From Asterias rubens (Eukaryota), in contig NC_047074.1 in assembly GCF_902459465.1 (NCBI RefSeq), positions 1,488,001 through 1,552,000 on the forward strand: a stretch of 64,000 bases of DNA, in the 5' to 3' direction. A program made the translations under genes and the position numbers. The notes under the pieces are model-generated. The model had not been told where the DNA came from. It searched no databases and worked only from the letters and a program-made list of their open reading frames with translations. This document shows, one piece after another, positions 31,191 through 49,022 of the stretch. Position 1 is the first letter of the stretch. Every line of letters begins with the position of its first letter.

Positions 31191-33593
31191 ATATTAACAA
31201 ACACATTTTATTGCACATAATCAACAGATAATTGTGTTCGCGTTTGCTTTCGTGTTGGGTTTTCTTTAATCAGCACATTGATTTGGTTTGACTTACAAAA
31301 AAATTACATCAAAAAAACGTTTTAAAATAGGCACAGTGCCAACCCGGACATATTAGAAGAGTTCATAAACTTCAAGGAAATTTGGGTTAATTCATGAGTT
31401 GGTTGAATGCCAATTTCGTGGCAAAGAATGCTATTATTTATGGACAATTCTTTGTTGAGTTGCATACAATTTTGAGGATGATGCAATGGTTGAAAAGTGA
31501 AACATTTTAAAGCCTTTTAACAAAAATGCAAACACAATCTGGGGGGGGGGGGGATCAATTCTTGATACCATGACAAACATAGAAGCAAAAAGATTCAACT
31601 TGCCATTTGTCAAATATATATATATTGTTTCTTTTGGCTAATAAACCCAAACACAAGAAACAAACTCCAAAACACAACATTTGACGAAAGTAAAAACACC
31701 AACTTTATTCATCCATAACACCCTCCAAACATTAAATCATATATAAATATATATTTTTTGAATCAAAGAAATAAATCCACCATGCAGTTTCCTCAAAAAT
31801 AAATTTTTATAAAACTAATAAATATCAGGTAGCCAAAAGCACACGATATATCCACACATTTTTGTACATCACAAACAATTTAAAATCACACATGACATAA
31901 TAAAGGGAAGGCTTAAAGTTCCCAATCGGGTATATATTCCCAATTGGGTAAGTTCAGTAACAATAATCCAGAAGAGAGAGTGCCAGAACTGGGCCAGTGA
32001 TTTACTTTTGTTTTTGTACTAACAAATATCCATGGTTGCTTCGCTATACCTTGGTGTACAAATGGGAATGTTAACTCCCACAGCTACTTGAATACAATAC
32101 CAGGGGTCGATTTCACAAAGAGTCGGGACCAGTTTTACTTGTCCTAACTTAGGATTAATCTTAAGGTCTGCATGCTACAGTGCAGGGTTAGGACTCGTCC
32201 TAAGTCCTAAGATAAGTTAGGAAGAAACTTGTAAAACCGATGGCTGGAGTTTAAGTTAATGATAGAAGTGTCAATAAACAACTATGATTGCTTCTCTTCA
32301 TCTAGGTGTAAAAATGGAGAATTTAGCTCCCACAAAACCTTGTCGTTACCAAGTTGGTGAACAGATAGTGATATTCACATAAAAATACATCAGTCAAATT
32401 GCTTAAATTGTAACTCAAACTTCATTATTAATAAAAAAACAAAAAATGGAAAGTGTTCAGACATAATTTTCTCATTTTTGGGTCTGACAGAAGGAATTGC
32501 GTAATACGGCAGCCCATCATGTTCATCAAGCAGCGAAATATTAGCGAATTCAAAGTCCGAAATCAGTTTCACACAATATGCAAATGCAATTTACTTTACA
32601 GCTAGTAAACTCATTTTGCTCGTTTAAGGTTCAAAAAGGTTAGGCAGTTTGATAAATTCCAGATCAAAAGTTGCAGCATTTTGTTGGAAAAAGTGATGAT
32701 AAAACTCATCAATATGCAAGATCATAAAAAATATTTTCATAATTGTATCCTTGATATATGGGAGGAACAACACTTTTTTATACACTGGCCTTGTTAGGTA
32801 TGTGAGTTTTATGTAACAATTTGGTAATCACAACCCACTGTTTGCTTATTTATACCATACAACCAACTAACCATTGTTGAAAATTTCCTTTCAAAAGGTT
32901 GTAACGTTTTTTGAGAAAATGGCTGAAAAATATGGAGCAGTTATGTCCTCGCAAAAAAAATAATCTGCAAGTTGAGAACCTAATCTGAGAAATACCACCA
33001 GCAGAAATGCTTCTCATAGTCAAATTTTGGTGGATAAAAAGTGATTTATTCTTTTGTCATGACAGGATCTGAATTGTTCACACTTTCCAAAACTCAAAGC
33101 TCTAACCAAAATAGAAAGAAATCTTCAAAAAAAAATAACAATGGTTTGACAAAAGATTTGTGAATATACCAAGAATCAATATAAGAGTATGGAAAACTCA
33201 GAATTTTTTGTTTTTCTTTGATTAAGGACCCTGGACTTTCAATTGGATGTAAAATCATAAAGAGGCATCAAAATGGGTGCATTTGATTAGCTTCTGCCCC
33301 TTTTGCCATTTGATCTGCCCCTGGTACGTTCGAATAGCTTTGACGTCATTACAGGGGCTCACCCTGGTCAGCCCCAAATGCCCTGCTTGTGGAGTGGGTC
33401 ACGCAACCAATAAAATAATGATGGGGTGTTTTAGTTATCACGTCACAAAAACTAACACTAACATTTGACTTACGTTATCTTTATAATTTTAGCTTTTAAA
33501 AAGAACTTCAAGATGAGGACTCTTCATAAATATTTTCAATATGTTATAAAAAATCTGTTTTAATTTACTAATTTTGTTTAATTTCAGCAACCA

Positions 33594-36500
33594 TTACGTC
33601 TTCAAATGTGAATTTTGGTTTGTTTCTTTAGCTATTAGTTCTTGAATTTCAGTTTGTAGAAGACCTGGCTCCATGAGTATTGAAGTGTCTCGACTCAGAT
33701 CGGTTAAAGCTGACGTTACCACTGTACAAAGGAAAAAAGAAATGATAAACAATTTAAGAAACGACAATCAAAACTTAAAAGTGAAAAATGGAACAGGCTA
33801 GGGGTCCTAGGTATGATTAAAGTTAGCCACTTTGTTTCCTTCACCAAAACACATTGGGAAAGCGCAACTCCCAAAAATGTTTGTGTATAGCGCAATGAGC
33901 ACTTTTAATGGATTTTTGCGCTTGATAAGTTTTCCTTATTATTATTATTTATATCATTATTAAGACGTGATACTCACACTTCCGAAGTGGTTTAAGCCGA
34001 CAGCATTCCTCAGACCAATCATGAACTACACGGTCAAAATCACTGACTTGAGACGAACTTACAGCCATCATGTAGGTGTCAAACAACGGCCGCACTATCA
34101 GGCTGAACTGTTATCATATAGACAGTAAAGGAAACTAAAATCTCATAGTTTTGTGGAGTTGAACAAGAAACAATTGACTAGAGCGAGACTTGAATCTGCC
34201 ACTTCTGTATTATTGGAATAATCAACTTACCACAAGGGATCCAATTTTGGGCTGAACAAAGAAAACTTGACAAGAGCGGGGCATGAACCAATGGCCTCCA
34301 GATTAGCGTGCTGGCACTCCACCAACTAGCCCTATGTTGGCGGTCTCTCTATTTTGTCAATATATTTTTGGGGGTGTCAGTTACACAGTGTTTTACATGG
34401 GTCTCATAGCTCGAAAAACCTTTCTGGAAATAAACAATAATATAAGGGCTTTGAGATGCCTGTAGATAAAGCGCTGTATAGACGATGTGACCTCATAACA
34501 TGATTCCGCCGAGCAAAACCTTTGTGTTTTGGCAGCCGGCTAGAAAATGTATGCAATGTTACCATACTACACATCTTTTTGCCCAACGAAACATGATGTA
34601 TACAGTGTTTTGTCAACAGAGGGTGATTTGAATGTAAACATAGGTCACATCGTCTAGTCTAAACAATGTAAGAACCAGGTTTTCAATTATCTTCATGACA
34701 CAACAGTAAGAAAACTCATACGAGATTTTATTTAATTTAAGGCAAAAAGTGCATGCTAAAGGATACAATCCAAAACCTCCAGTTTTTCTTCATTCTTTTG
34801 TGGAGGTATGTCTCCATCATATTCTTTAACTGCCTGTCACTCTGAGTGTTCACTGGTGCCCCGCTGTCTGGTAACTCATCTTGATACGTGCTGCAACAAG
34901 AGAAAGGTATATAGATCAAAGGTCCGCTTGCCTTGCTGCCTTTCCAGCAGTGAATTGCTGGACACTATTGGTAATTGTCAAAAACCAAGTCTTCTCACTT
35001 GGTGTATTCCCAACATATGTACAAAATAACAAACCTTTGAAAACTTGAACTCAATTGGTCATCTAAGTTGCGAGATAATAATGGAAAAGAAAAAAACCCT
35101 TGTCACACAAAGTTTTGTGCTTTCAGATGCTTGATTTTGGGAACTCAAAATCTAATTCCGAGGTCTCAAAATAAAATTCTGAGGTCTCAAAATAAAATTT
35201 GTGGACGATTACTTCTTTCTCGAAAACTATGTTACTTCAGAGGGAGCCATTTCTCACAATGTTTTATACCATCCACAGCTCTCCGTTGCTTGTTACCAAG
35301 TAAGTTTTTGTGCGAACAATTACTTTGATTAACTAGCAAAAGTGTCCACTGCCTTTAAAACACCCGAAAATCAGTCCCAAGTCATTCTGGCTAGTTCAGT
35401 GTTGAAAGCATAAAAAATGAGTTTCTTATGTACTCACTCAATTTCTTTCTTCAGCAACAGAACTTCTCCTTTAAGTTTGTCGCTGGTGTTCCTCAGATCT
35501 TCAACTTCATGTTTCATCGTGACGATGTGCTCATGGGCTGAAAAAGAACACACAAATTTGTTGCACATAATGATGGTAATAATAAGTATAAAATACATTT
35601 AAAAAAAAATACTTTATCAATCATATTATCATCAATCAAATAAAACTTGTGCTTTGATTTGGCCCAATCATCCCATGAATCACATGTAGACTACCGAGGG
35701 CATGGATTTCACTGCCCCTGGTCTTGGCGCCCCTTCAAAAGTTTCACATTGACTTTCAGATTTTTCAATGGAAGTGCCCTTTGCAAAATGGAAATGGCCT
35801 TGCCCAAATTAAAGATGAAATTCCAGGTCTGCGGCATGTCACACTCAACGTCACCCACCTTTCTGCAGCATGCCTGCCGTGCTACTTTTGTTTGATTCAG
35901 TGGCATTCCTCAAGCTTGGGACCACTCTTTGGATTTCATCGAGACCGGATTGGATGTTGAACCTACGCTTGTGTTCCGACTGAAGGTGTTTGTATCGACG
36001 TCGTGTTTCCTGAGAATGAACAGAACAATCTCTTGTTGAAATAGCATTTATTTTGCAAGTTAAAATTGTAATGACATGTCTTACACATCTTTATGACCAC
36101 TTGTTCGATACCTTTAAAGGAATGATGCATTCTTGAATTTATTCCAGTCCTCTATTATCATAGACTTGTGGACAAGTCAATAACTGTTTTCTGGTGATAG
36201 TGTTCTGACTCTCTCCGCGATCCCGCGACCCGGGCAGCTTTGACCGAATGCAGTGATCTCGCAAGAGCGGTATTCGGTCGTGGAAACCCGAAACCCGAAA
36301 CCCGAAACACTCACCACCACCACGACTCGACTATCACCGATACAAACCATTGCAAGTCTTCTATTTTCAATCAAACACAACTTAACAATTAATCTGCATT
36401 AAAGTCAGCGAATAACTTACCTTTTCGCCACTACTGTCTGGGGTTTTCCTCCGCTTTGCTTGTGGTGTTGGAAACTATAAAGAGGAGCAGAAAGAGACTT

Positions 36501-39500
36501 ATCGACACAGGGTTAAAGTTTAGGTTGGGGTCGCCGTTTTTTCCCAGTTTTTACAAGTTTCCATTTGCCTTTTCCTTAAAATTCTTGTGAGAATGTAAAC
36601 TAATACACAGTGTGAATGTTAATGAAAAATATTTTCAAAACATTGAAAGTATCACAAGAGTATATTAATTGTATTATTTTACTCTGGAAATGTCATTATC
36701 CCTTAAGTCCAGATTTCAAACGGGGCGGGGTGGGGGTCACTGACATTAAATGTGGGGGGGGGGGGGGTATTTGAAAAGTGTAGTGATGTTTTTTAGAAAA
36801 TGGTTGATCCAGCCAGACCACGCTTAAAAAAATTGACTGTTGTTCAGGCGTTTTAACTGGACTTTGACCAGCGGAACACTGTTAAGGAAAAACATTGTGA
36901 CCGCTTAAGTGCGAGGGGAGTGTACTCACATCAAACTCTGTGCCTTCTGTCATGCTCCCAGGAGATGAGGCAGCACCTATGGTTACACACGGTCACAGAA
37001 AGGGAATAGGGTCACAGAATGGGGTGGGAATAGAGCGACAGATGAGGAGTGGAATAAGATGACAGAGGGGTGGGGAATATGGTCACAGATGGGGGTGGGG
37101 AATAGATTGACAGACATGGTGAGAAATAATGGTCACGAACACGGTGGGGAATAGGGTAAGAAGAGGTCAGAAATTTGTTTCGAGGCAAGATAGTTGGAAG
37201 ATCAGCACGGAGAGAGATGGAGACAAATGGTGACAAAAAATGGTGTGGGGGTTGCAGAGAAATGGCGGTAGGGATAACAAGGGGTAAAGATTGTGATGAT
37301 TGGGAGAGAGAGAAAATACAAAATTGAGGATTAGAGTATCTGCAATAACATTTCAATTCTGCTGTAAAATCGGGTTAAAAAGGGTTATTTGGGGTTTTAA
37401 ATAATTGCACAAAAAGTTTTTTTCATTTCAAAGTACTCATTTTCAATTTAAATATGAAAAGTTCTTGATATCTTGCATAATAAACTTTAATGAGTTTTCC
37501 TACAAAAATACTTAAATTTCTATGGGGAAAAAAAGGGTATTTTGATTAATTCACACAAAAAACAAATGCATTCATGAAAACAAGTGCATGTTTCGTCAAC
37601 AATTGCAAGAGCATGATAAAAGGCAAGTAGAAACTGAAAATAAAGACGTTACTAAAATTTTGAATCTCTTTTTTTTTTTGCCTGAAAAGAATTTTTTTTC
37701 CCATCTGAAATTGAAATAAAGATTGTAATTAGCATAATATTGAATTTCATCAACAAAACCTTCAAAAGATTTTGGGGGATTGGCTGTTTTTTGGGTAAAT
37801 GAAAATGAAGAATAAGTGTAGTGTTAATTTCCCCCTGCAGAGAAAAACAAAAAACAAAATGGGAATTCACATGTTGGCTGCAAAGAAAGGGGGAAAAAAA
37901 ATCAAATTTGAAAATGTTTTGTTGATACAAAATAAATGGAGTCCTGTCAAAAAAACAAAAAACACATTTTTAGATTGTCTACCATTCACAAGTTAGTGAT
38001 AACTGCAGAAAAGCAATTTTAAGTGATTGACATTTTCAACATCAAACTGCTAAGAAAGGGGTTAAAAATTTGAATTGTGAATTTTATTTTAGTTCTTATT
38101 CATGGCAGGGCGGGCAATTCTCTGGCGAGGTTGTCTCAAACTTTGAGCGGGCAACTCGCCCTCCCAAAATCCACGTGTTAAAAACACTGCCAAGAAGTAT
38201 CTAAATGATATACATTTACAACTAAACTTAAAATGGTAGACAGTCTTGTAAAGTCTAGGGTAATGTAAGCAGCCAATCACAATTAGCCACATGTCAGACA
38301 TTATTGAACCCTAGCAGAACCAGCCAAAATATCATATCACATGTACAATTTGTGCCTGGTATCCCGCTCATTTCTGCTAACCAGAAAATTTGGAAGCAGT
38401 TCTTGAGATTGGCTACACATTAACGACTGCAATCATTTTGTGCTTAAAAAATTCACACAGAAAAAAAGAAAACTAAAACAAGAAAAGCATTTTAAAATCT
38501 GTTCTGCCACGACTTTTGCTACAAATTTGTTGGACTATTTCACAAACAATGTGTGAAAGTACTTTTTCAAAGCAAGAGTGCAATTTAAACACTCATAATT
38601 CGAGTAAAAGTGAATTGAGAAGGAAATGTCAGTTCCTGATTGTTCATGGATGCAACGAAGGCGATTGCCTCCATGCCCCATGGTCATTGCCTTGGTGCCC
38701 TTGAAATGCTCCAGTTGAATTTTACAATTTCCTCATAGGGTGCCCTTTACCCTGGAGAAAAATGCCTTGGTGCCCTTACAAAACGAGGCATACATGCCTG
38801 AAACGTCGTGGCAGAACCCAACAGCAATAAAACAAACATAAACACCACGGGGCCGACACTTCGCAACCATGGCTATACTTGCCGCAAACCGAACGCAGTA
38901 TGCGAATGGTCATCAACAATGTTGTTTTCAATTTTGCGACAGTTAAGCATTTTTTACGAAAGCCCCTTCGATTATATTTCCAAAAGTCCTGCGACGGCTA
39001 CCCTGTTTTTTTTTCCTCCAGAAAAAAACTGAGGCGGAGGGGTTTACTCACTGGAAGCCGTGGAAGGGTGGTGGCTGGTTAACAGGAGGGGGCTCAAATT
39101 CGTCTCCGTACGAGCCTCAGGTTTGCCAAGGTCTTTAGTCTCGGACTATGGAAATATATATTGTGTAAAAAAAGGGGAATGATAGCTTGATTAGAAGAAT
39201 AGATATTGAAGAAAAAAAAGTTAAACTTATCAATAACATTTGGTTTGCCGTAATACCAAGTGTCAAACTTCTTTAATTTTTAAAAAGTTTCTACACTCCT
39301 TCCCTTTAATTGACAGTTTTGTACAGGAATTCTGTGTATTATTATAAACTTGTTCACCTTCAAAAATATCTTATCTCACTAAATGTTCTTAAAGAACATC
39401 TTACAAAAATAGTTAATGGCCTGACATTTTCGACACCAGCAGAGTGTTTCTCAAAGGCTAACAGGACATATTGTCATGTCTTAACAGGTTTAGAAATTTA

Positions 39501-42500
39501 AAAAAAAGTGTGGAAACTTTCCAGAATTGTTCTAATATTGTGAGTTTTTTTTTCAATTGTTTCCATAAATACCTACCTTTCCCATGTATGCAGCGTACGA
39601 TGCAGAGTCTGCAAACACAACAGTTTGACTAACTCTGGGACTTCTCTCGTTGGAATTCTTCCTACTGTGGGAGCGTTCTGCTCAGAAGAAAATAGAACAA
39701 AATTAATCCAGAACAGGCAAGTAATATGTCTTCTTAAGTCTTAAGAATGCCATGCTTGTGCTTTTTTAAGTCCAGAAACTAAAACTAGCTGTTGCCAACT
39801 AAAAAGCAATGTATTCGAAAAATAGTTAATAGCCTAATGTTTTGACCCTGGCAGAGTCTTTCATGAAGGCTCAGAGAAAGACTCTGCTTGAGCCTAAATG
39901 TGTAGTTATTGTAATACGTTTCCTAATGCGCTAAGGTATTAAACAAACTTTTCAGTTTACATTTTCCAGTTGCATTAACACCAAATAATCAATATTGTTT
40001 ATCCCCAAACCTCTTTTGATCTTATATGACGATGACGTGCTTGCAGTCGTCTTTGGAATTTGATGGTAGGAATACTGCTCAAACTCCATGGACTCTGCCA
40101 AGTAGGGTGTCATGTGACCAGGCGTCACATGACCTGGTGTCACATGGCCTGGAGTGACATACCCTGGTGTCACATGACCAGGTGTCACATGACCGGGTGT
40201 CACATGACCGGGTGTCACATGACCGGGTGTCACATGACCAGGTGTCACATGACCGGGTGTCCCATAACCAGGTGTCACATGACCAGGTGTCACATGACCA
40301 GGCGTCCCATGACCAGGCGTCCCATGACCAGGGGTTCTATAACCAGGGGTCACATGGACGGGGGTCACCTGACCCGGTGTCCTTCGGCCTGATGTCACGT
40401 GACCAGGTGTGGTGTTGCCGGGAGAAGGCGTGTTATGTGGTGTGGCATACATTGCGCCGAAAACCACATTCTGGTCCATTGGTGCCATGGTGTCCAAAAC
40501 GATCCCGTGAGGGAGCCCTCCAGCGTTCTTGATGAAAGCTGCGTTGGTGCTCGACAGGCCTCCTTGAGACATGATCCCCTGCGGGAATACGCCGTTGGTG
40601 ACGGACACATCGGAAGAGCCACCTGCGAAGGACCAGTTAACTCCTGTTGAGGGAACAGACTGTGGGAGGTTTGAATATGGCTCGCTGACTTGCACGTCTG
40701 GGTTCCCTTGCATTGCCCCATCCCTCCAGAATGTCTCATTGCTGCCGACGCCAGCTGCGGGTTGAGCTTCAGATGGAAGATTCCAATTATAGCCTACCTC
40801 TTGTTGCTTAGCACTTTGCTGCTGTTGTTGTTGTAACTGAGCTGCTAGCATGTAGATGGCGTCGTTTATATCTACCCCAGAATTCAAACACTGTTGGTTC
40901 TTGACCATTGTTGGACTCGGAGGTTCCTGCTTCAATGGTTGTGATGTGTGATAAACCTGCAAAATAATTTACAATTCAAATATAAGAATCTACGAACATC
41001 TTCAATTAATGAAGGCTCCCCTCTATATCTCAGAACTACTTAAAGTTTACACGTCAAGGAATCTTCAATCCAGACCATGCTTCTCCTCAATGAACTTGAG
41101 TCTCGACACTCCTGGGGTGACAGGCCTTTTTCTTTAGCCACGCCATGCATCTGGAACTCTCTAACACTTTATTAGATCTTGTCTTTGTACCACCAATTTC
41201 AAATCTCTTCTCAAAACTTATCTTATGTCAAAGGTTTTTAAGAACTAATTTTGTTTGGTAACCAATAGACTAACTAACTTTAGGGGGCACCTTGCTCACG
41301 TTAAGGCACATCCCACTTGAGTCAAGATAACTTGACTATTATTATTGTCAGTTTTTATGGAATATATTTTGGTCAGACTTACAGTTGACCCAGTTGTCAT
41401 TGCGGACACTTCATACATTGCAGATGAATCCACTTGCATTGCGGTGACTCCAGGCCCCGACGCCACTGCCTCGAATATGGGCGGCATCTGCCCGTAGCTG
41501 CTGGACGTTGTAGAGGGGTAGTTACTGGTCTTGGTTTGATTGGAGCTTCCTTGGTAGCTGACTTGAGGCCAGTGTTGGGTCGACGACGACGTCAAGGTGG
41601 GGAAGGAAAGACTTCGGGAGGCAGTGGCAGGGTTCGGGGCGCCCGTGACAAAATAGGGACAGGTCGATGGATTAGAAGACACTGGCCTTTCCTCGTTGAC
41701 GGTCTGAGAAAAAGGTATATTATAATAATATATTTGATATATATAGCACCTAATATAAAAATATCTCTCAGCGCTTTACAAAAAATATCAAATAAATAAC
41801 ATTTGAAAGATATCCAATGGTCAGATAGTAGGAGGGTTAAAGTAGTCACCCCATAGTTTACATCTCTTTGTTAAGCAAAGTGCGAACTTGACGACTGCAA
41901 CTTACCGTGAAAGTTCCAAGGGACATAGAGTCGTTGAAGGCACTCATACTGTTGTCTGAGTTTATAATACTATCTGGAAACTCTATCAGACTACGCAAGT
42001 CAAACTTGGTTGGGGTTTTACTGAGAGTGTCTGAGATAAAAGGAAAACAAGTTGTTACATTTCACTTAAAGGCAGTGGACACTTTTGGTAATTCCTCAAA
42101 ATAATTATTAGCATAAAACCCTACTTGCTAACGAGTAATGGGTAAAACATTGTGAGCAACAACTTTCTCTGAGTTTTCGAGACAGAAGTAACTTTCCATG
42201 AATTTGATTTTGAGACCTCAGATTTAGAATTTGAGGTCTCGAAATCAAGCATCTGAAAGCATACAACTTCGTGTGACAAGGGTGTTTTTTCTTTCATTAT
42301 TATCCCACAACTTCGATCACCAATTGAGCTCAAATTTTCACAGGTTTGTTATTTTATGCATATTTTGAGATAGAGACTGGTCTTTGACAATTACCAATAG
42401 TGTCCAGTGTCTTTAATTAGTACAGGCATGGAAGTCAGGAGTTCTATTTAAATGCTTAGAAAACTAAACTTAGATGCACAACTCGTCATTAACAGACCTA

Positions 42501-45500
42501 ATTTACATGAAAACAAGCTTTAAAGTTCCTGCTTTTTTTTTTACCTTGAATTGAGTCCAAAGTGTCCATAAAATCGTCGTCAAAGTCTGGCTCCAACTGC
42601 ATCAATCCGGGTTGGATGACGTCGGCATTGTATACATGACGAGCTGCTCAAAAAGAAAGAAAAATATCAGAAAAATAGCACTCACACCTATGGCATCTAA
42701 AGCCCCATCACACCAAACTTGTTCTCACTACGTACTGAAAAACATTGTAGCTGAACAGGCTTAAACTATGCAAACAGCTCGAACGGGTTTGATCGGAAAT
42801 GGGGCTCCAGAATCTTGGGCCTGCTAAAAAATTGTAATAATAATAATAATAATAACCGTATTTATAACGCGCCTTTTGCCAAAGGATACAAAGCGCCAGG
42901 TATTACTACTGCAAGGAGTGGGCGAATTTTTGAGATATAAGACCTAATCCTTAAGCACCATGTAATGGCTTACAAGGTGCTGTGGCGCACTATGCTGCCA
43001 ATCCAGCAAGGAACACCGGGGCGAACCCCTTCTCTTTTTGAAAAGTGCACTGGGTCCTTTACATGCGTTTAAACAACACATGGGACCAAGGGCTTTAAGT
43101 CCCATCCGAAGGACAAAGCAATGGTTATGTGTCTTGCTTAAGGACACAAGTGTCACGGCTGGGGAATCGAACCCACACTCTGCTGATCAGAAACACCAGA
43201 GTTTGACTTCGGTGCTCTTAACCGCTCGGCCACGAAACTCCCAGATCATTCCCTCCTGCAATCAGACGGAGTGGCAACATACTTTAAACTGGAAGGACGT
43301 ACTCTGAGCGAAATTGACGTACTTGGGTCACGTTATAGACATAGTCCGGCAAAGCTATAAATTCTGGCCAGGCCCAAACGTTCGGACATTTTGAGAACTA
43401 GTTTGGTGTGACCTAGCCTTGCCAACTGTTTTTTTTAAGACTCAACACAATTCTGTTTCACTCACTGATTTTCTTGGGGTGTGGAACAGAGAAATGTTTC
43501 TTCTTGCTGATGAAGAGAGTGTCAGAGAAATCCTTTAGGGTGTCCTCGTTGGCTAGGGTGCAGGCAGACATTGGGGACAACGGAGGGTGTGACATATTCA
43601 AGTCTATCGCATTCTCTTCTGCATTGTCTACTGGCGGTGAACTTGAAGCTACGGGCGGCTTAAACGAACAATGAAAAAGGTGGAATACTTTTAACCCTCA
43701 GAGTGCTTACTTAAAGGCAAATTATACCTCTGTTTTGAGGGGAACTGTTGATTGTTTTAATTCACTTTAAATGTAATTGTAATTAAACAAACCTGTGATA
43801 TTTCATTTGAAGAGGTGGTAGCATTTTTTGAGATATTGGTGAAAATCTCAAGCAGTTATGTCCAAACAGTAATAGTACAAACTTTGCTTTTACCATTTCC
43901 TGCTTAGCAGGGATAAGCAGGACACCAGCCACAAATTGTACATGTTATGTGTTAGATTGGCTGGTAACCTTATTCTGGTAAGCATAATGTTATTGTGCTT
44001 AGCTGCAGTTGAGCATAATAGCCGCTATGAAATCAAGCCCTGTTGTCAAGTGGGGATTTCTGTAAAGGATACTGTTGCTGTGCTCAAGCAGTTATAAGAA
44101 GTTGGGCCCTGGACTAAGGCTAACCTTTATTGTTGTTGTTGTTGATAAATCCAGGTGATAGAGGCGCCATTTTCTGTAGTCTCTGAGGACGGAACCAACT
44201 TGTGATTGGTTGTACTGTATGCTGCCAGTCGTTCCACGTCCACTCTGAATTGCGTCAGCCTTTTGAAAGAACAAAATAATGACTCAAACTTATTCTCTTA
44301 AATTTCACTCACTGGCTTTAGTGAGTTTCATTCACTGGCTTAGCGAGTCTTACTCACCAGCTTAGCAAGTTTTCCTCACTGGCTTAAGAGCTTCACTCAA
44401 TAGCTTAGAGGTTCCACTCACCAGCTTAGCGAGTGTTACTCACCAGGTAAGCGAGGTTTACTCACTGGCTTAACAAGTTTCCCTCAAGTTTTATTTACCA
44501 ACTTTGCAAGTTTTTTGCATTGACTTAGCCACTAACCAGCTGAGGGGGATTTCACTCAACAGCTTAGAGAGATTCATTCACTGGCTTAGCGAGCTTCATT
44601 CACCAGCTTAGCGAGTTTCACTCACCAGCTAGGCGAGTTTCACTCACCAGCTGAGCGAATATCACTCATGGGAAATGACAGAAGCTGAAAAGAATGTACT
44701 TACCTGAAGGGTGGGGCGCCGTGTTTCCGGAAGCTGGGGATCAAAATGGCAGCCAATGGGCTTCTTGTTCTTCACGACTTAAAAAAAAAATTTGAGTATC
44801 AAGAGTTAAAATATCATATTGGGTATTATTATTTAAAAGCAACCCTTCAAACAAGTATCAAAGGAACTTAAAACTATTACTACCCCAAAAATATGGGGCA
44901 CTGCTTCAAGTCACATTTGTGGGCTTAACTATTCCAATGTGGGCTTAACTACACGTATATGGGCAAAACTATTCCAGAAACCTAAGCACTAAGCAGTATT
45001 TACTGCATCGGCTTTATGAAATTGATTTACTTAAGCTGTTATTGTTGAGCAGAAAATACTGCTTAGCGAAAGTCATTGGGGGCACAAGTTGCAAAAAATG
45101 TATGTTAACTTTATGGAATTTTTGCTGATAACGTACATGAGCTAACAAGAACAAGTTGTGATGCTTACAAGCTTTACAAAATTTACATTTGACAACCCCA
45201 AATCAGGGACTTACATTGGATATGCCAGCTCCTCCAGATGGCACTGTTGATGCGTAGTTTGTCCGCCCATGACCAGCGAGGTTGGGACAGAAGTCTGGGT
45301 TTGGGATACTTCAGATGGATTCCTTTTCCTTCATGTCTGTTTTAAAAAAAACATTAATATAAAAATTCAAGATCAATCTTAATTCTTTGCCAAATGGGTG
45401 GAGAGAAGCAATTATGGATTAAGTAACTTGTAAAGTTTCTTGCTCAGGTCATGGACACTGTCACGACCGGTGTCGCATGCAATTATGTCCTCTTTGCAAT

Positions 45501-47785
45501 ACTATCCGGAGGACATTATTGCATGTCGCCGGACAGTTTTGCATTATGCAATCGTGTCCACCCGTACGCTGCTGCAAAATGCAATTGAGTCCGCCCGGAC
45601 ACATTTGCATATATACATGTATGCAGTTGTGTCCGCCCCCGAGCAAAACCATCCTTGCAGTAAATAAAACGCCCTTAGTCGACGAAAAACATTCGTCTTT
45701 TTACAACCCAAGTGCATGTCATGAATGACAAGAGAAATTTTCGGCCGTTGGGTATTCGCTGCAATCATAAAATACGTGAATATTCTCCATTTAAAATACG
45801 TAGGTTCAGTGCATGCACGCTTGCTTACGCGCACACAACATACGTGTACAGTCATGTACATGTCCACCGGACGGTATTTGCATAGCCCCGGACACGATTG
45901 CATATGCAAAAGTGTCCGGAGCGGACAGTATTGCATGGCGGACACATTGCATCTGACATCGGGACTCGACACAACAACAAAATTTCAATTTTTTCTTTTG
46001 ACAAAAAGACCTTACATTAAAAATAACATAAACTTTTCAAATCAATTCAATCGGTACAGGTTATTAATATTATTCTCAACTAAAATTACTAATTTATACA
46101 ACGTTTTCATCAACTACCAGCTGCCACTCACTAAACATGCTAAACTTAGTCAGAGCAGAGAGATCTTGCATTATTATATTGATTATACATTTATTAATTA
46201 TTTCGTGGGAGGTCCTGTTTTTCGAGGTGTCCCTAAAATCGTGGCAAATCTTTTACCTCTCCGTGCACGATGTAAAACAGTCCCTAGATAACAAATTTGT
46301 GGTTTTATTTGCCAAGCAAAGAGTCTCCTCTCCCTTGACCAAAACTTAGAAACACGTAAGGCTCCACTGGTTATTTGCAGTTGTAAATGCAAAAAGATTT
46401 GGTATTTTAGGCATTTCTACAAGGTACAAAAAATGTCATAATGTTGAGGCCATATAAAAACATTTGCCCACCGACAAAGTTTCATCAAACACTATTTCAA
46501 TTCACAATTCATGATTCATCAAATCATGTGACTGAATATTTTGCTGAGCATTCTGGAAAAAAAAATACAGAGGCCTAAAGAAGCCATGCGCCTTATATAA
46601 TTTTCTAATATTTTTGGAGATTTTTTTTTAACCCTCATATCAATATTAATATTAATTTTAAAATTTAAACATCAGCTTGTTGATTCAATTATCACTGTTT
46701 ATTTATACGCTTTATTATAAATATTAATATGACAAAATTATTAAACATTTAGATTTGAAAGCCAGTATTTATTCATACTTTTTATTATTATTATTATTAT
46801 TATTTTTTTTTTTGCAAGTTATCATGGTAATTTTTAAAATTTAATAAAAAAATATTGTGAACAAAATGAAGGTACAACTGCTGGCTATATAGAGTCATAC
46901 ACAGAGTTACAAAGAACACTAGTAGTAGTCACTGCAGATGTTTCTTTCATGTATGGCTTCACCGGGAAACCATACTTTCTCGTTTGCCGTGAAAACAGGA
47001 AAAACTCAAAACAAATGGGGCCAGTTGATTTTTACCTCCATGGTTGAAGTCATCGAAGGTGTGTGGTGTGAACATCTCAATGTCCATCGATCAAGTTTTA
47101 ACGTATGTTTGCATACTTCATAATAAACAAATGAAGATAATTAGGGCACCGGTTGATATATGGCATCATTATTTTTTTCCCAATTCAAAGAAAAAGGCAT
47201 AATTAATACCGTGAAAACTGGTAAGAGGAGGGTATATTTTATGAATATGATTATGTGTGACTAGACTTAGGCCGTGTCCGAATTGGCGACTTCGGCTACA
47301 GCTATGGCTAGGGCGCGCGCGTCTGCTATTCTTCAACACTGACAGACGCGCTGATCTAGCCGTAGCTGTAGCCAAAGTCGCCAATTCGGACACGGACTTG
47401 GTGTTATTAGTTAGAGTCCTAGACTAGAGTATTGCAAAACATGTTGAATAAAACAATTTTAAAACAATGTCATTATTTCAAATTTGACCTCTTACCCATT
47501 TTGCCCGAGAGCAAGTGTCATACAATCAAACAGGTCGATGATGGATTCCTGGCTATTCGCCCGAGACGTCATCTGCGAACCAGGCCGTGAAGAGGCTCTG
47601 GAGCCCGGCAGGGAGTTCGAGGCCGACCGCGGTCGGGACGATATTGAGTCCGTAACCGGATGTTTCGCCGTGGACGATTTCGAATCACTCCCATTTTCAC
47701 CCCCAATAGAATACTTCGTCGGGACTGAATCGGAACGATCTGATCTCGTCATCTTTATAATTGCATCTCCGTCCCGACGAGTCAT
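33594..47785 (-). CDS. MLXIP: Mondo/ChREBP-family (MLXIP-like) bHLH-ZIP transcription factor, divergent, 18 coding exons, 1077 aa
   Basis: Exons: 47496-47785, 45215-45336, 44704-44777, 44125-44259, 43466-43658, 42545-42643, 41906-42030, 41383-41703, 40011-40956, 39577-39677, 39052-39145, 36930-36976, 36421-36474, 35859-36009, 35438-35537, 34767-34890, 33978-34107, 33594-33721. Phases are consistent (3234 nt). Mondo motifs: DLFDCMTLA (MCR2), WADKLRINSAIWRSWHIQ (MCR3), RDYRKWRLY (MCR4), DFSDTLF (MCR6), NADVIQPGLMQLEP (MCR5), bHLH HLQSEHKRRFNI, and NWRFWIFSLIVRPLFDTY. The symbol is family-level; orthology is untested. Confidence 0.88.
34108..34766 (-). other. U12-type GT-AG intron in the Mondo-like gene
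   Basis: Donor is TGGATT|GTATCCTTT. Branch-like TTTCCTTTAC at 34125-34134 lies 17 nt from the AG. The join NWRFWI|FSLIVRPLF is in frame. Confidence 0.85.
34955..35354. mobile_element. Family A Kolobok-like MITE (Mondo intron)
   Basis: Ends GTGTCCACTGCCT|TTAA, with the same internal sequence. Confidence 0.8.
36990..37270. repeat. Degenerate purine-rich ~25-bp repeat
   Basis: Units like ggtcacagatgggggtggggaatag. Confidence 0.75.
40105..40419 (-). repeat. Coding 15-bp minisatellite, 21 units, encoding (GHVTP)n
   Basis: Consensus GGTCATGTGACACCT/C lies inside Mondo exon 40011-40956. There are 21 pentapeptide units from GNTTP to GHMTP. Confidence 0.97.
42070..42412. mobile_element. Family A Kolobok-like MITE, 40 nt from a Mondo acceptor
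   Basis: TTAA|AGGCAGTGGACAC...GTGTCCAGTGTCT|TTAA. Confidence 0.85.
42835..43235 (-). mobile_element. tRNA-derived SINE (other copies about 3971-4343, 62850-63200, fragment 25380-25540)
   Basis: The minus strand has A box TGGCCGAGCGG and B box GGTTCGATTCC, and a tail gcgttataaata...(TTA)n. Confidence 0.8.
44305..44670. repeat. 21-22 bp minisatellite in Mondo intron 3
   Basis: Degenerate tandem unit cactcaccagcttagcgagttt, about 16 copies. Confidence 0.9.
45459..45971. mobile_element. TGT...ACA TIR element with internal GGAC sub-repeats
   Basis: Imperfect TIR of about 35 bp and inverted subterminal repeat blocks; TSD not clear. Confidence 0.45.
47270..47397. mobile_element. PIF/Harbinger-like palindromic MITE (Mondo intron 1)
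   Basis: TTA|GGCCGTGTCCGAATTGGCGAC...GTCGCCAATTCGGACACGGAC. Confidence 0.7.
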
Positions 47786-47859
47786 GTTGTGTTGACGTGC
47801 TTGGTGGGAATTTTGTCAAAACTTGCCGGCATGTTTTCGGGACATTATTAACAGATTTC

Positions 47860-48010
47860 GTCCGCCATACTCATGTAACGACGACGGTGCCAACTTGTAC
47901 CTGTCACACGAGAGGGCGCGCGCGCGCCACTTCACACTCGTCCCCAGCGCCTTGCATGTAGACTGCCTGGCCGCTGGGCCACCACAATTGATCTCCAATG
48001 AGGGCGCTAT
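47860..48010 (-). promoter_or_regulatory. Proximal promoter of the Mondo-like gene
   Basis: GC-rich segment with CCGCCAT (YY1-like), AGAGGGCGC at 47911-47919 and a GCGCGCGC run. Confidence 0.5.
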
Positions 48011-49022
48011 GCTGGTTTAACGGTGGTATTTTGTTTTCAGGTGAAAAATTTACGGTTGTGTTAAATACCGCCCTCTTACGTGTGGACAACTGCTGCTTTA
48101 TGAATTATGTAGCATTTTAAGACGGTACAAACATTAGAAGTTCGTTGAGAGGATCAGTCGGCCGTCACATGGCAAAACAATGCAACTCGAAAATGAGCAT
48201 TTTAAGAAAAAGTGCTTCAAAGATTCATCGTCTGCCATTTTTTAATGTATTTCTCTATTCAACTAAAACTGTTACAGAATATTTGTGAGTTGTTGACATA
48301 TCAGCCAGAAAAAAATCGTTTGAAAAGAACAAATGGTTTTGTTGTTATTAATATTAATTAAGCGAAGTTACATTGTTTTACCAAACAAATTGTCTAATTT
48401 GCCACTTTTGTTATTTCATTGACAATAATGCAACTTATGTTACTAATATTAAATAATGTATTTTTATGGCAAAACAATGCATCAAACATTAATTTAAAAA
48501 TCATTAGTAATGTTCTTCCCGAAATTTCATGGCAAAACAAAGTATCTTATCTTACTTCCCATAAATTGTCCGCTTTCCCAAAATATTTCCTACCAAAACA
48601 ATGTAAACGATTTTAAAGGTTTAACACAAACGTCAATTTATGGCAGAACAACGTATCTAATTGTACGATCCTATTAAACTGTGTAAAACAATTTATTTTA
48701 AACAATTGTATCACAAGTATTTATCAACCAAAAACGTTGATTGTCAAAATATGAATATCCCTTTTAGGAAGAAACATGCGGCGAAGAAGTAATTTTCGAT
48801 TGATTCAAATGTAATTTTTGTTTATTATGACTTTACAAATTTGGTCAACATTATTCACATTTATGAACTTTATCGAACAACAACACATCAATAAATACAA
48901 CTCAACTTCCAATATGTAAGTATGAAAACATCACTAAGGCAGTTTTGATCTCATTAATCAACCGAAACAAGAAATCTTGTTTTCGAACTGGTTTGAATCT
49001 ACTATTTTTTTTTTTTTTTTTG

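What the first reader, a model, noticed from the sequence alone, without database searches (positions are those of the whole stretch)
43466..47785. Mondo/ChREBP-like factor with a rebuilt glucose-sensing module
Seen: the N-terminus is a 77-aa Ser/Arg-rich stretch with no IHSGHFMVS-type MCR1, and there is an in-frame stop upstream of the ATG. MCR2 and the helical core of MCR3 (DKLRINSAIWRSW) are kept. The KWKNFKG part of MCR3 and the EGxYWKRR part of MCR4 are replaced, and the basic tail after KWRLY becomes HLDL. Known: MCR1-4 form the low-glucose inhibitory, NES/NLS and 14-3-3 module of MondoA/ChREBP, and deleting them gives deregulated activators. Inference: this is a derived paralog or lineage form that no longer senses glucose-6-phosphate in the canonical way.
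Basis: partly seen in the sequence, partly recalled or inferred. Interest (0 to 1): 0.7.

Follow-up and report, generated by a model that had tools for sequence, protein, structure and literature searches.

The report
Second, rewired Mondo gene of echinoderms
This starfish gene is a real, expressed second copy of the sugar-sensing transcription factor Mondo. All echinoderm classes sampled keep it beside the normal copy, and its sugar-sensing front end has been rebuilt in one conserved way, although invertebrates were thought to have only one Mondo.

Summary
Window 47785-43466 (minus strand) holds exons 1-5 of an 18-exon gene. Its product is the RefSeq protein "uncharacterized protein LOC117298436 [Asterias rubens]" (1077 aa). 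Spliced transcript contigs from two starfish species confirm every N-terminal exon join. The 5' end runs colinear with the genome past an in-frame TGA, so no MCRI exon was missed.

The protein keeps these parts:
- the MCRII export helix and the 14-3-3 helix of MCRIII
- the Y..KWR core of MCRIV
- MCR6, MCRV, the bHLH-zipper and the DCD

It lacks these parts:
- MCRI (HSGxFMxS)
- SPKWKxFKG
- LEGKYWKR, including the otherwise invariant Trp170
- the basic tail (NLS)

The same genome has a fully canonical Mondo on another contig (C5). The window gene is therefore a derived paralog, not the lineage's Mondo.

Orthologs with the same rebuild occur in sea stars, sea urchins, sea cucumbers and crinoids, and canonical Mondo co-occurs in four of these species. 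They form one 100/100 clade that mirrors echinoderm phylogeny, so the duplication predates crown echinoderms. The clade has its own invariant motifs (RxxSxPGS, HPPLSP, KTPxK, and a basic cluster before the bHLH).

Loss of canonical glucose-6-phosphate control is a reasonable inference but was not tested. No paper describing this paralog was found.

The parts
47816..47887 (-). 5' UTR seen in transcripts, with an in-frame TGA at 47818-47816
   Evidence: Contigs run colinear with the genome to 47887 (X1 record 4) and to 47849 (X2 record 7, X5 record 20). The stop codon was read.
47496..47785 (-). Exon 1: ATG, then a Ser/Arg-rich N-terminus that replaces MCRI. It holds RASSRPGS (47599-47576) and the MCRII/NES helix SQESIIDLFDCMTLAL (47554-47507).
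   Evidence: The alignment shows RxxSxPGS and SRxNSQESIIDLFD conserved in all W-type proteins that have an N-terminus.
45215..45336 (-). Exon 2 (MCRIII): a rebuilt N-half, YPKPRLLSQPRWSWA (45308-45264), and the retained 14-3-3 helix DKLRINSAIWRSWHIQ (45263-45216)
   Evidence: PDB ChREBP peptide match. Paralog comparison. Exon join confirmed.
44704..44777 (-). Exon 3: extension of MCRIII (FVKNKKPIGCHFDPQLP). The F145 equivalent is kept. The P148 equivalent is displaced by one residue in the two sea stars.
   Evidence: Motif definition from PMC3323566.
44125..44259 (-). Exon 4 (MCRIV): rebuilt N-half ADAIQSG...YNQSQVGS (44259-44191, no LEGKYWKR, Trp170 replaced by Asn); retained core VLRDYRKWRLY (44190-44158); non-basic tail HLDL (44157-44146)
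43466..43658 (-). Exon 5: clade-specific HPPLSP (43589-43572) and MCR6 KDFSDTLFISK (43535-43503, with Ile where canonical proteins have Ser/Thr after DTLF)
   Evidence: MCR6 definition.
42545..42643 (-). Exon 6: MCRV (YNADVIQPGLMQLEPDFDDDFMDTLDSIQ, 42632-42546). The Pro291 equivalent is kept.
41906..42030 (-). Exon 7: clade-specific KTPTK motif (42019-42005)
39052..41703 (-). Exons 8-11 (41703-41383, 40956-40011, 39677-39577, 39145-39052): poorly conserved Ser/Thr/Pro-rich centre, including the (GHVTP)n repeat. No LxQLLT nuclear-receptor box.
36421..36976 (-). Exons 12-13 (36976-36930, 36474-36421): linker with the conserved basic cluster KRRK (36456-36445) just before the bHLH. It is a candidate relocated NLS.
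   Evidence: a basic cluster sits at this place in 9/9 W-type proteins and in none of the canonical set. Exons.
35859..36009 (-). Exon 14: basic region plus helix-loop-helix (HLQSEHKRRFNIQSGLDEIQ...). The H-x3-E-x3-R contacts are kept. Gln is replaced by His in the whole clade.
   Evidence: Pfam HLH, E=1.3e-5..
33593..35537 (-). Exons 15-18 (35537-35438 zipper; 34890-34767, 34107-33978 and 33721-33593 DCD/WMC plus stop)
   Evidence: The DCD exon matches the canonical paralog and one further locus on C3, which looks like Mlx.

Best explanation
SHOWN: The window encodes an intact, transcribed 18-exon Mondo-family bHLH-zipper/DCD transcription factor. It is one of two Mondo genes in Asterias rubens.
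- The other copy, on contig C5, is canonical.
- The window gene belongs to an ancient paralog clade, here called 'W-type'. Sea stars, sea urchins, sea cucumbers and crinoids all have it, and canonical Mondo was found beside it in one species of each of these four classes.
- All members share the same rebuild of the low-glucose inhibitory domain.

Lost in the clade:
- MCRI
- the SPKWKxFKG segment
- LEGKYWKR, including the otherwise invariant Trp170
- the basic NLS tail
- the LxQLLT box

Kept in the clade:
- the NES pattern of MCRII
- the 14-3-3 helix residues I/W/R/W
- the Y..KWR core
- MCR6 and MCRV
- the DNA-contact residues H/E/R and the DCD tryptophans

Gained in the clade:
- RxxSxPGS and SRxNSQES just before the NES
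- HPPLSP and KTPxK
- a K/R cluster before the bHLH

INFERRED:
- The protein still pairs with the single Mlx, binds CACGTG-type carbohydrate-response elements and activates through its GRACE part.
- Its nuclear entry and activity are no longer set by the canonical MCRI/MCRIV-dependent glucose-6-phosphate switch.
- Instead, phosphorylation of the new Arg-directed and Pro-directed Ser/Thr sites is proposed to control it. RxxSxP fits the mode-1 14-3-3 consensus, so these sites may act together with the retained 14-3-3 helix and NES. Import would go through the relocated basic cluster.
For: - Gene and transcript.
- Canonical second gene in the same genome. Its exons match ChREBP 5f74_B at E=2.7e-8 and E=3.8e-5.
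- Shared intron positions between the two genes.
- Orthologs in four echinoderm classes, with canonical Mondo co-occurring in A. rubens, Lytechinus pictus, Holothuria leucospilota and Antedon mediterranea.
- Tree: the W clade has 100/100 support and an internal order of crinoids, then asteroids, then (holothuroids + echinoids).
- Constraint: only 65 of 156 canonical near-invariant columns are kept, but many changed columns are fixed in a new state across the clade.
- All 7 exonic differences listed between the two Asterias-like species (exons 2, 5 and 6) are synonymous.
- Clade-specific motifs occur in 8/8 or 9/9 members.
- Published mutational background (YWK mutants are nuclear and active; MCRI is needed for the glucose response; I/W/R and W are needed for 14-3-3 binding): PMC3323566.
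- One Mlx-like DCD locus only.
Against: - No functional data exist. Mlx binding, DNA binding, 14-3-3 binding and glucose response were not tested.
- The phospho-switch idea rests on short motifs only.
- AlphaFold2 models of both N-termini were poor (mean pLDDT 54). They show the same three helices but no tertiary picture.
- MCR6, MCRV, the 14-3-3 helix and the NES are retained, so some glucose control may persist.
- Expression evidence comes from assembled contigs, so tissue and level are unknown.
- The tree does not settle when the duplication happened.
Confidence: 0.6

Rival explanations
1. The W-type protein is still a canonical glucose-6-phosphate-responsive Mondo. The replaced segments are dispensable or functionally equivalent, and the two paralogs differ mainly in where and when they are expressed (subfunctionalisation).
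For: MCRII, the 14-3-3 helix, the KWR core, MCR6 (DTLF) and MCRV are kept. PMC3323566 notes that the first half of the NLS is already variable in non-vertebrate Mondo.
Against: MCRI and Trp170 are reported as invariant or necessary across Mondo proteins, and every W-type protein lacks them. The DTLF[ST] position is Ile in all nine. 91 of 156 canonical near-invariant columns are changed.
Confidence: 0.25
2. The oddities are a gene-model artefact: a missed upstream exon encodes MCRI, or exons are wrongly joined.
For: Before testing, the first intron is long (2.2 kb) and 16 kb of the window lie upstream.
Against: Spliced contigs from four runs reproduce the joins and run unspliced through the in-frame stop. 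No MCRI-like peptide occurs in the window. Independent RefSeq models in seven other species have the same N-terminus, starting MT[RKS]R.
Confidence: 0.02
3. This is the lineage's only Mondo, simply fast-evolving in starfish or echinoderms.
For: The literature states that invertebrates have one Mondo (PMC3323566).
Against: A canonical Mondo with MCRI-V, bHLHZ and DCD lies at G000:C5. Both types co-occur in species of four classes.
Confidence: 0.01
4. It is a decaying duplicate under relaxed selection, on its way to being a pseudogene or a dominant-negative remnant.
For: The stem branch is long, 1.4-2.1 substitutions per site, and many invariant residues are lost.
Against: The 1077-codon frame is open with 17 GT-AG introns. 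The gene has been retained since before the crinoid split, and its changed positions are fixed in new states. All 7 listed differences (exons 2, 5 and 6) are synonymous. It is transcribed and correctly spliced.
Confidence: 0.03

Closest known systems
Canonical non-vertebrate Mondo (Drosophila Mondo/Mio, C. elegans MML-1; here the A. rubens C5 gene, Antedon P0008, Lytechinus P0033)
   Same: It has the same order of parts: MCRII, MCRIII, MCRIV core, MCR6, MCRV, a long low-complexity centre, bHLH-zipper and DCD. It shares intron positions with the C5 gene, and the N-terminal start is similar (MARDD vs MTRRD).
   Different: It has no MCRI, SPKWKxFKG, LEGKYWKR/Trp170, basic tail or LxQLLT box. Changes fixed across the clade are Gln to His in the basic region, GFD to GLD, LPASG to LPD(S/T)G, and CSL to CRL. 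It has new conserved motifs. The bHLH sits in one exon instead of two.
Vertebrate MondoA (MLXIP) and ChREBP (MLXIPL)
   Same: It is also one of a pair of Mondo paralogs in one genome that presumably share a single Mlx. The 14-3-3 helix is near-identical to the crystallised ChREBP peptide.
   Different: The duplication is independent. The vertebrate pair groups with amphioxus, while the W clade is made of echinoderm sequences only. Both vertebrate paralogs keep MCRI-V intact and the W-type does not.
ChREBP-beta, the LID-less isoform made from an alternative promoter (from general knowledge, not tested here)
   Same: It is a Mondo form in which the inhibitory module is not canonical.
   Different: ChREBP-beta removes MCRI-IV entirely by alternative start. 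The W-type is a separate gene that keeps MCRII, the MCRIII helix and the MCRIV core and replaces the rest with new conserved sequence.

Membership tests
Mondo family (MLXIP/MLXIPL/Mondo) | bHLH-zipper with class-B DNA contacts (H-x3-E-x3-R) | tested here: met
   Pfam PF00010, E=1.3e-5. H875/E879/R883 are kept in 7/7 W-type proteins.
Mondo family (MLXIP/MLXIPL/Mondo) | C-terminal DCD/WMC domain shared with Mlx | tested here: met
   The exons align to the canonical paralog (E=2.7e-11 and 1.9e-10). The LP, NWxFW, LF, W and C..L..LR columns are kept. The R812 and P832 equivalents vary.
Mondo family (MLXIP/MLXIPL/Mondo) | MCRII nuclear-export helix (L-x-x-L-F-x-x-L-x-L pattern) | tested here: met
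   IIDLFDCMTL keeps the hydrophobic pattern. Export itself was not assayed.
Mondo family (MLXIP/MLXIPL/Mondo) | MCRIII 14-3-3-binding helix (I/W/R and W) | tested here: met
   It matches PDB ChREBP peptides 9gcp_B and 4gnt_B. R, N, W, R, W and Q are invariant in the clade.
Mondo family (MLXIP/MLXIPL/Mondo) | MCRI HSGxFMxS | tested here: not met
   It is absent from the protein, from all six frames of the window and from all W-type orthologs.
Mondo family (MLXIP/MLXIPL/Mondo) | MCRIV invariant residues W170, Y181, W184, R185 and the basic NLS | tested here: not met
   Y181, W184 and R185 are kept. W170 is replaced by N, K or H in 7/7. KYWKR and the basic tail are absent.
Mondo family (MLXIP/MLXIPL/Mondo) | MCR6 [ST]DTLF[ST] and MCRV ...LQP | tested here: inconclusive
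   DTLF and the final Pro are kept. The residue after DTLF is Ile in 9/9, and Gln290 is replaced by Glu in most.
Mondo family (MLXIP/MLXIPL/Mondo) | Heterodimerisation with Mlx and glucose-dependent nuclear activity | not testable with these tools
   Only one Mlx-like DCD locus was found in the genome. No binding or activity test was possible.
Echinoderm W-type Mondo clade (defined here) | RxxSxPGS, QESIIDLFD, SPKP[KR], ADxIQ(G/S), HPPLSP, DTLFIS, KTPxK, a pre-bHLH K/R cluster and SEHKRR | tested here: met
   The window protein carries all of them, and they are conserved across four classes. Clade support is 100/100.

The most novel reading that the evidence does not exclude
Echinoderms have kept, for roughly half a billion years, a kinase-gated, glucose-6-phosphate-independent Mondo. 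It would compete or cooperate with canonical Mondo for the single Mlx and for carbohydrate-response elements. That would make it a natural 'LID-swap' experiment showing which MCR pieces carry the sugar signal. The paralog may even predate the echinoderm-hemichordate split and have been lost elsewhere: the AU test disfavours an echinoderm-only duplication at p=0.025.
Probability: 0.3. Interest if true: 0.75.

Novelty: new variant of a known kind. Interest (0 to 1): 0.55.

Why it matters
How MondoA and ChREBP read glucose-6-phosphate is still unsettled, and the roles of MCRI and MCRIV rest mostly on artificial deletions. This finding offers a natural, long-conserved Mondo in which those pieces were replaced while the export helix, 14-3-3 helix, activation region, DNA-binding domain and Mlx-pairing domain were kept. 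A canonical copy sits beside it in the same cell lineage. Paired assays and chimeras between the two echinoderm paralogs could therefore test directly which segments carry the sugar signal. The finding also corrects the textbook statement that invertebrates have a single Mondo. It gives a proper name to a RefSeq protein now labelled 'uncharacterized' in A. rubens and labelled indistinguishably from the canonical gene in other echinoderms.

Tried and rejected
- AlphaFold2 on the canonical N-terminus (42-row alignment) and on the W-type N-terminus (51 rows) was meant to test whether the three lost segments form one structural unit. Both models were poor (mean pLDDT 54, pTM 0.25-0.28). They show only the three shared helices, so no conclusion was drawn and no fold search was run.
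- Synteny: the look-up of encoding contigs had no record for P0014 or P0006. The Diadema locus is a 62-kb gene with no called neighbour within 10 kb. Conserved linkage to CUL4 could not be checked.
- Pfam finds nothing on the N-terminal exons. There is no Pfam model for the MCRs.
- The search of the 50%-identity representatives with the bHLH exon found W-type clusters only among echinoderm or unnamed sequences. The N-terminal search found no hemichordate or ophiuroid W-type. Absence there is not proven.
- No complex prediction was run, because no Mlx or 14-3-3 protein of this species was available as an unaltered session sequence.
- The strict Sx[ST]xx[ST] 'G6P motif' of PMC3323566 is not met by several canonical echinoderm proteins either. 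Only the DTLF[ST]-to-DTLFI change is claimed.
- Three paper searches found no description of an echinoderm second Mondo.
Full report
**What is at the coordinates**

The window is G000:C14:1488001-1552000 of a 417.6-Mb starfish assembly. On the minus strand, 47785-43466 holds the first five coding exons of a gene. I mapped the gene completely: 18 exons, 47785 to 33593, with every intron GT...AG. Its translation is identical to database protein P0001, 1077 aa, "uncharacterized protein LOC117298436 [Asterias rubens]". An in-frame TGA lies 33 nt upstream of the ATG. Pfam recognises the HLH in exon 14. The gene ends about 2.7 kb upstream of a cullin-4-like gene on the same strand.

**Transcript check**

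Logan contigs of four public runs, from two closely related organisms, were laid on 42400-48399.
- One 908-nt contig (X1 record 1, no mismatches) covers 47632-47496, 45336-45215, a 75-nt block that fits exon 3, 44258-44125 and 43658-43466, and continues beyond.
- Contigs of the second organism (X2 record 7, X5 record 20) show the same joins.
- At the 5' end the contigs stay colinear with the genome to 47849-47887, through the in-frame stop, with no joint to an upstream exon.
- No HSGHFMVS-like peptide exists in any frame of the window.

The N-terminal model is therefore real, and a missed MCRI exon is excluded as far as these data go. All seven exonic differences listed between the two organisms (exons 2, 5 and 6) are synonymous.

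**What is kept and what is replaced**

I used the crystallised ChREBP chains as a tool-derived reference.
- The exon-2 core DKLRINSAIWRSWHIQ aligns to the 14-3-3-binding peptide (9gcp_B, 4gnt_B; E=7e-4).
- Exon 4 aligns to ChREBP 169-188 only weakly (E=1.4), as YNQSQVGSVLRDYRKWRLYH against YWKRRIEVVMREYHKWRIYY.

McFerrin and Atchley (PMC3323566) list features that are invariant across Mondo proteins:
- HSGxFMxS in MCRI
- F145 and P148
- W170, Y181, W184 and R185
- P291
- the signature VxxEY[KH]KWRx[FY][FY][KR]
- MCR6 [ST]DTLF[ST]

How the window protein compares:
- Absent: MCRI.
- Replaced or changed: W170 is Asn, the basic tail is HLDL, and Ile follows DTLF.
- Kept: F145, Y181, W184, R185 and P291.
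- Also kept: the NES hydrophobic pattern, and the I/W/R/W residues whose mutation abolishes 14-3-3 binding.

**The genome has a canonical Mondo too**

Searching the whole assembly with exon 2 found a second locus at G000:C5:10575556-10575654. Its neighbouring open frames carry VIHSGHFMVS, FSKLFDCMSLAY and RLVSPKWKTFKGMKLSWKDKIRLNNAIWREWHQQ.

I fetched 60 kb around it. The locus encodes a full canonical Mondo: MCRI-V, AIVLEGKYWKRTLSTVVREYQKWRIFHRKLR, HISAEQKRR, a zipper and a DCD. Its exons match ChREBP 5f74_B at E=2.7e-8 and 3.8e-5.

Exon-by-exon comparison pairs the MCRIII, post-MCRIII, MCRIV, MCR6, MCRV and DCD exons of the two genes. This points to a DNA-level duplication, not a retrocopy.

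A DCD search of the genome found only three loci: C5, the window gene, and one on C3 whose open frame looks like Mlx.

**The paralog is echinoderm-wide**

A full HMMER pass over 1.84 billion cluster representatives with the bHLH exon returned 11 proteins at E up to 0.001. An N-terminal search with P0001 returned high-scoring relatives (42-68% identity) from these species:
- Acanthaster planci
- Diadema setosum
- Lytechinus pictus
- Holothuria leucospilota
- Apostichopus japonicus
- Anneissia japonica
- Antedon mediterranea

Strongylocentrotus purpuratus XP_030837856.1 sits in the same cluster as P0003. All other hits are canonical Mondo at about 30% identity.

Every one of these W-type proteins lacks HSGxFMxS. 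Each has SPKP[KR] where canonical proteins have SPKWKxFKG, has (A/S)D.IQ(G/S) followed by a variable insert where they have LEGKYWKR, and has no basic tail.

Canonical Mondo is also present in Antedon (P0008), Lytechinus (P0033), Holothuria (P0150), the brittle star Amphiura (P0034) and the hemichordate Glandiceps (P0100). Both genes therefore co-occur in one species of each of four classes. No W-type was found for ophiuroids or hemichordates, but absence is not proven.

**Phylogeny**

I built a maximum-likelihood tree (LG+C20 PMSF) of 28-30 proteins, which included a partial C5 model that I assembled from exons.
- The W clade has 100/100 support. Its stem is 1.4-2.1 substitutions per site. 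Inside it, crinoids branch first, then asteroids, then holothuroids plus echinoids.
- Canonical echinoderm Mondo forms its own 100/99 clade, sister to the hemichordate.
- Forcing W plus canonical echinoderm Mondo into one clade costs 6.8 log-likelihood units (AU p=0.025). Forcing W into Ambulacraria costs 0.8 (p=0.26).
- With such a long stem I treat this only as follows: the duplication is at least as old as crown echinoderms and may be older.
- I left out unk_P0010 in the second run because of its very long branch.

**Constraint and new motifs**

Of 156 columns that are near-invariant in 15 canonical bilaterian Mondos, only 65 are kept in at least 6 of 7 W-type proteins. Many changed columns are fixed in a new state across the clade.

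Examples of fixed changes:
- Trp to Pro in KWK
- Glu to Gln in LEG
- Gln to His in AEQKRR
- GFD to GLD
- LPA to LPD
- CSL to CRL

Clade-specific conserved motifs:
- RxxSxPGS and SRxNSQES directly before the export helix
- HPPLSP
- DTLFIS
- KTP[TV]K
- a K/R cluster about 15 residues before the basic region

None of the nine W-type proteins has the LxQLL[TN] box found in most canonical invertebrate proteins.

**How it probably works**

Shown: this is an intact, spliced, conserved Mondo paralog with DNA-contact residues, zipper, DCD, activation-region motifs, export helix and 14-3-3 helix.

Inferred:
- It pairs with Mlx and binds CACGTG-type elements.
- It has lost MCRI, which is needed for glucose-induced activation.
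- It has lost the YWK element, whose mutation makes MondoA nuclear and active at any glucose level.
- It has lost the MCRIV NLS.
- All three roles are as summarised in PMC3323566.
- Its gating is therefore unlikely to follow the canonical glucose-6-phosphate switch.
- The new Arg-directed and Pro-directed Ser/Thr motifs beside the NES suggest control by phosphorylation. RxxSxP is the general mode-1 14-3-3 consensus (from general knowledge).
- The basic cluster before the bHLH is a candidate replacement NLS.
- I put about 0.6 on the overall statement. The phospho-switch part alone deserves less, about 0.35.

**Structure attempts**

AlphaFold2 gave low-confidence models for both N-termini (pLDDT 54). 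The same three helices (MCRII, MCRIII, MCRIV core) appear in both. Nothing further can be drawn from them.

**Novelty**

The proteins are in RefSeq under generic names, and the A. rubens one is "uncharacterized". [quoted passage not shown] The 2011 network survey places echinoderms in its 'Core' network group. Three full-text searches found no description of this paralog. I class it as a new variant of a known kind.

Noticed in passing
window 40105-40419 (exon 9): The (GHVTP)n repeat lies inside the coding exon of the same gene and is part of RefSeq protein P0001. The sea-urchin ortholog (P0003) has a different short repeat (HHQVASPG-like) at about the same place, so this segment seems repeat-prone.
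   Followed up: partly
window 30904-20576, minus strand: A multi-exon cullin-4-like gene lies directly downstream of the Mondo paralog. This was read from the open frames only (e.g. ...[21 protein letters not shown]...).
   Followed up: no
window 17896-17273, minus strand: A 208-aa open frame has an F-box-like start and a SPRY-like body (FBXO45-like by eye).
   Followed up: no
window 42800-43400, 43800-44050, 45400-46000, 47200-47400: Intronic interspersed repeats have summed contig depths in the thousands in the four runs laid, which are labelled RNA only by guess, and many chimeric joints. Copies of the 42124-42348 element also lie in introns of the C5 Mondo gene.
   Followed up: partly
window 44300-44660: Intron 3 holds an array of about 20-30-nt units (gctaagccagtgagtgaaac-like).
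   Followed up: no
G000:C5:10539000-10576800 (L004-L009), minus strand: The canonical A. rubens Mondo gene spans about 38 kb. It has a 471-codon open exon with a run of about 90 Gln, and its basic region and HLH are split over two exons, unlike the window gene.
   Followed up: partly
G000:C3:14102516-14102620 (L012 1459-1599, minus strand): This is the only other DCD-like exon in the genome (FQSFNESISVANFAELSKCVFSWLEEYCKPQ), presumably Mlx.
   Followed up: partly
P0002 / P0147 (ENA contigs of 531 and 2887 nt): Short W-type bHLH fragments (SEHKRRFNIQTGLDE) of unknown organism. They may be an unsampled echinoderm class.
   Followed up: no
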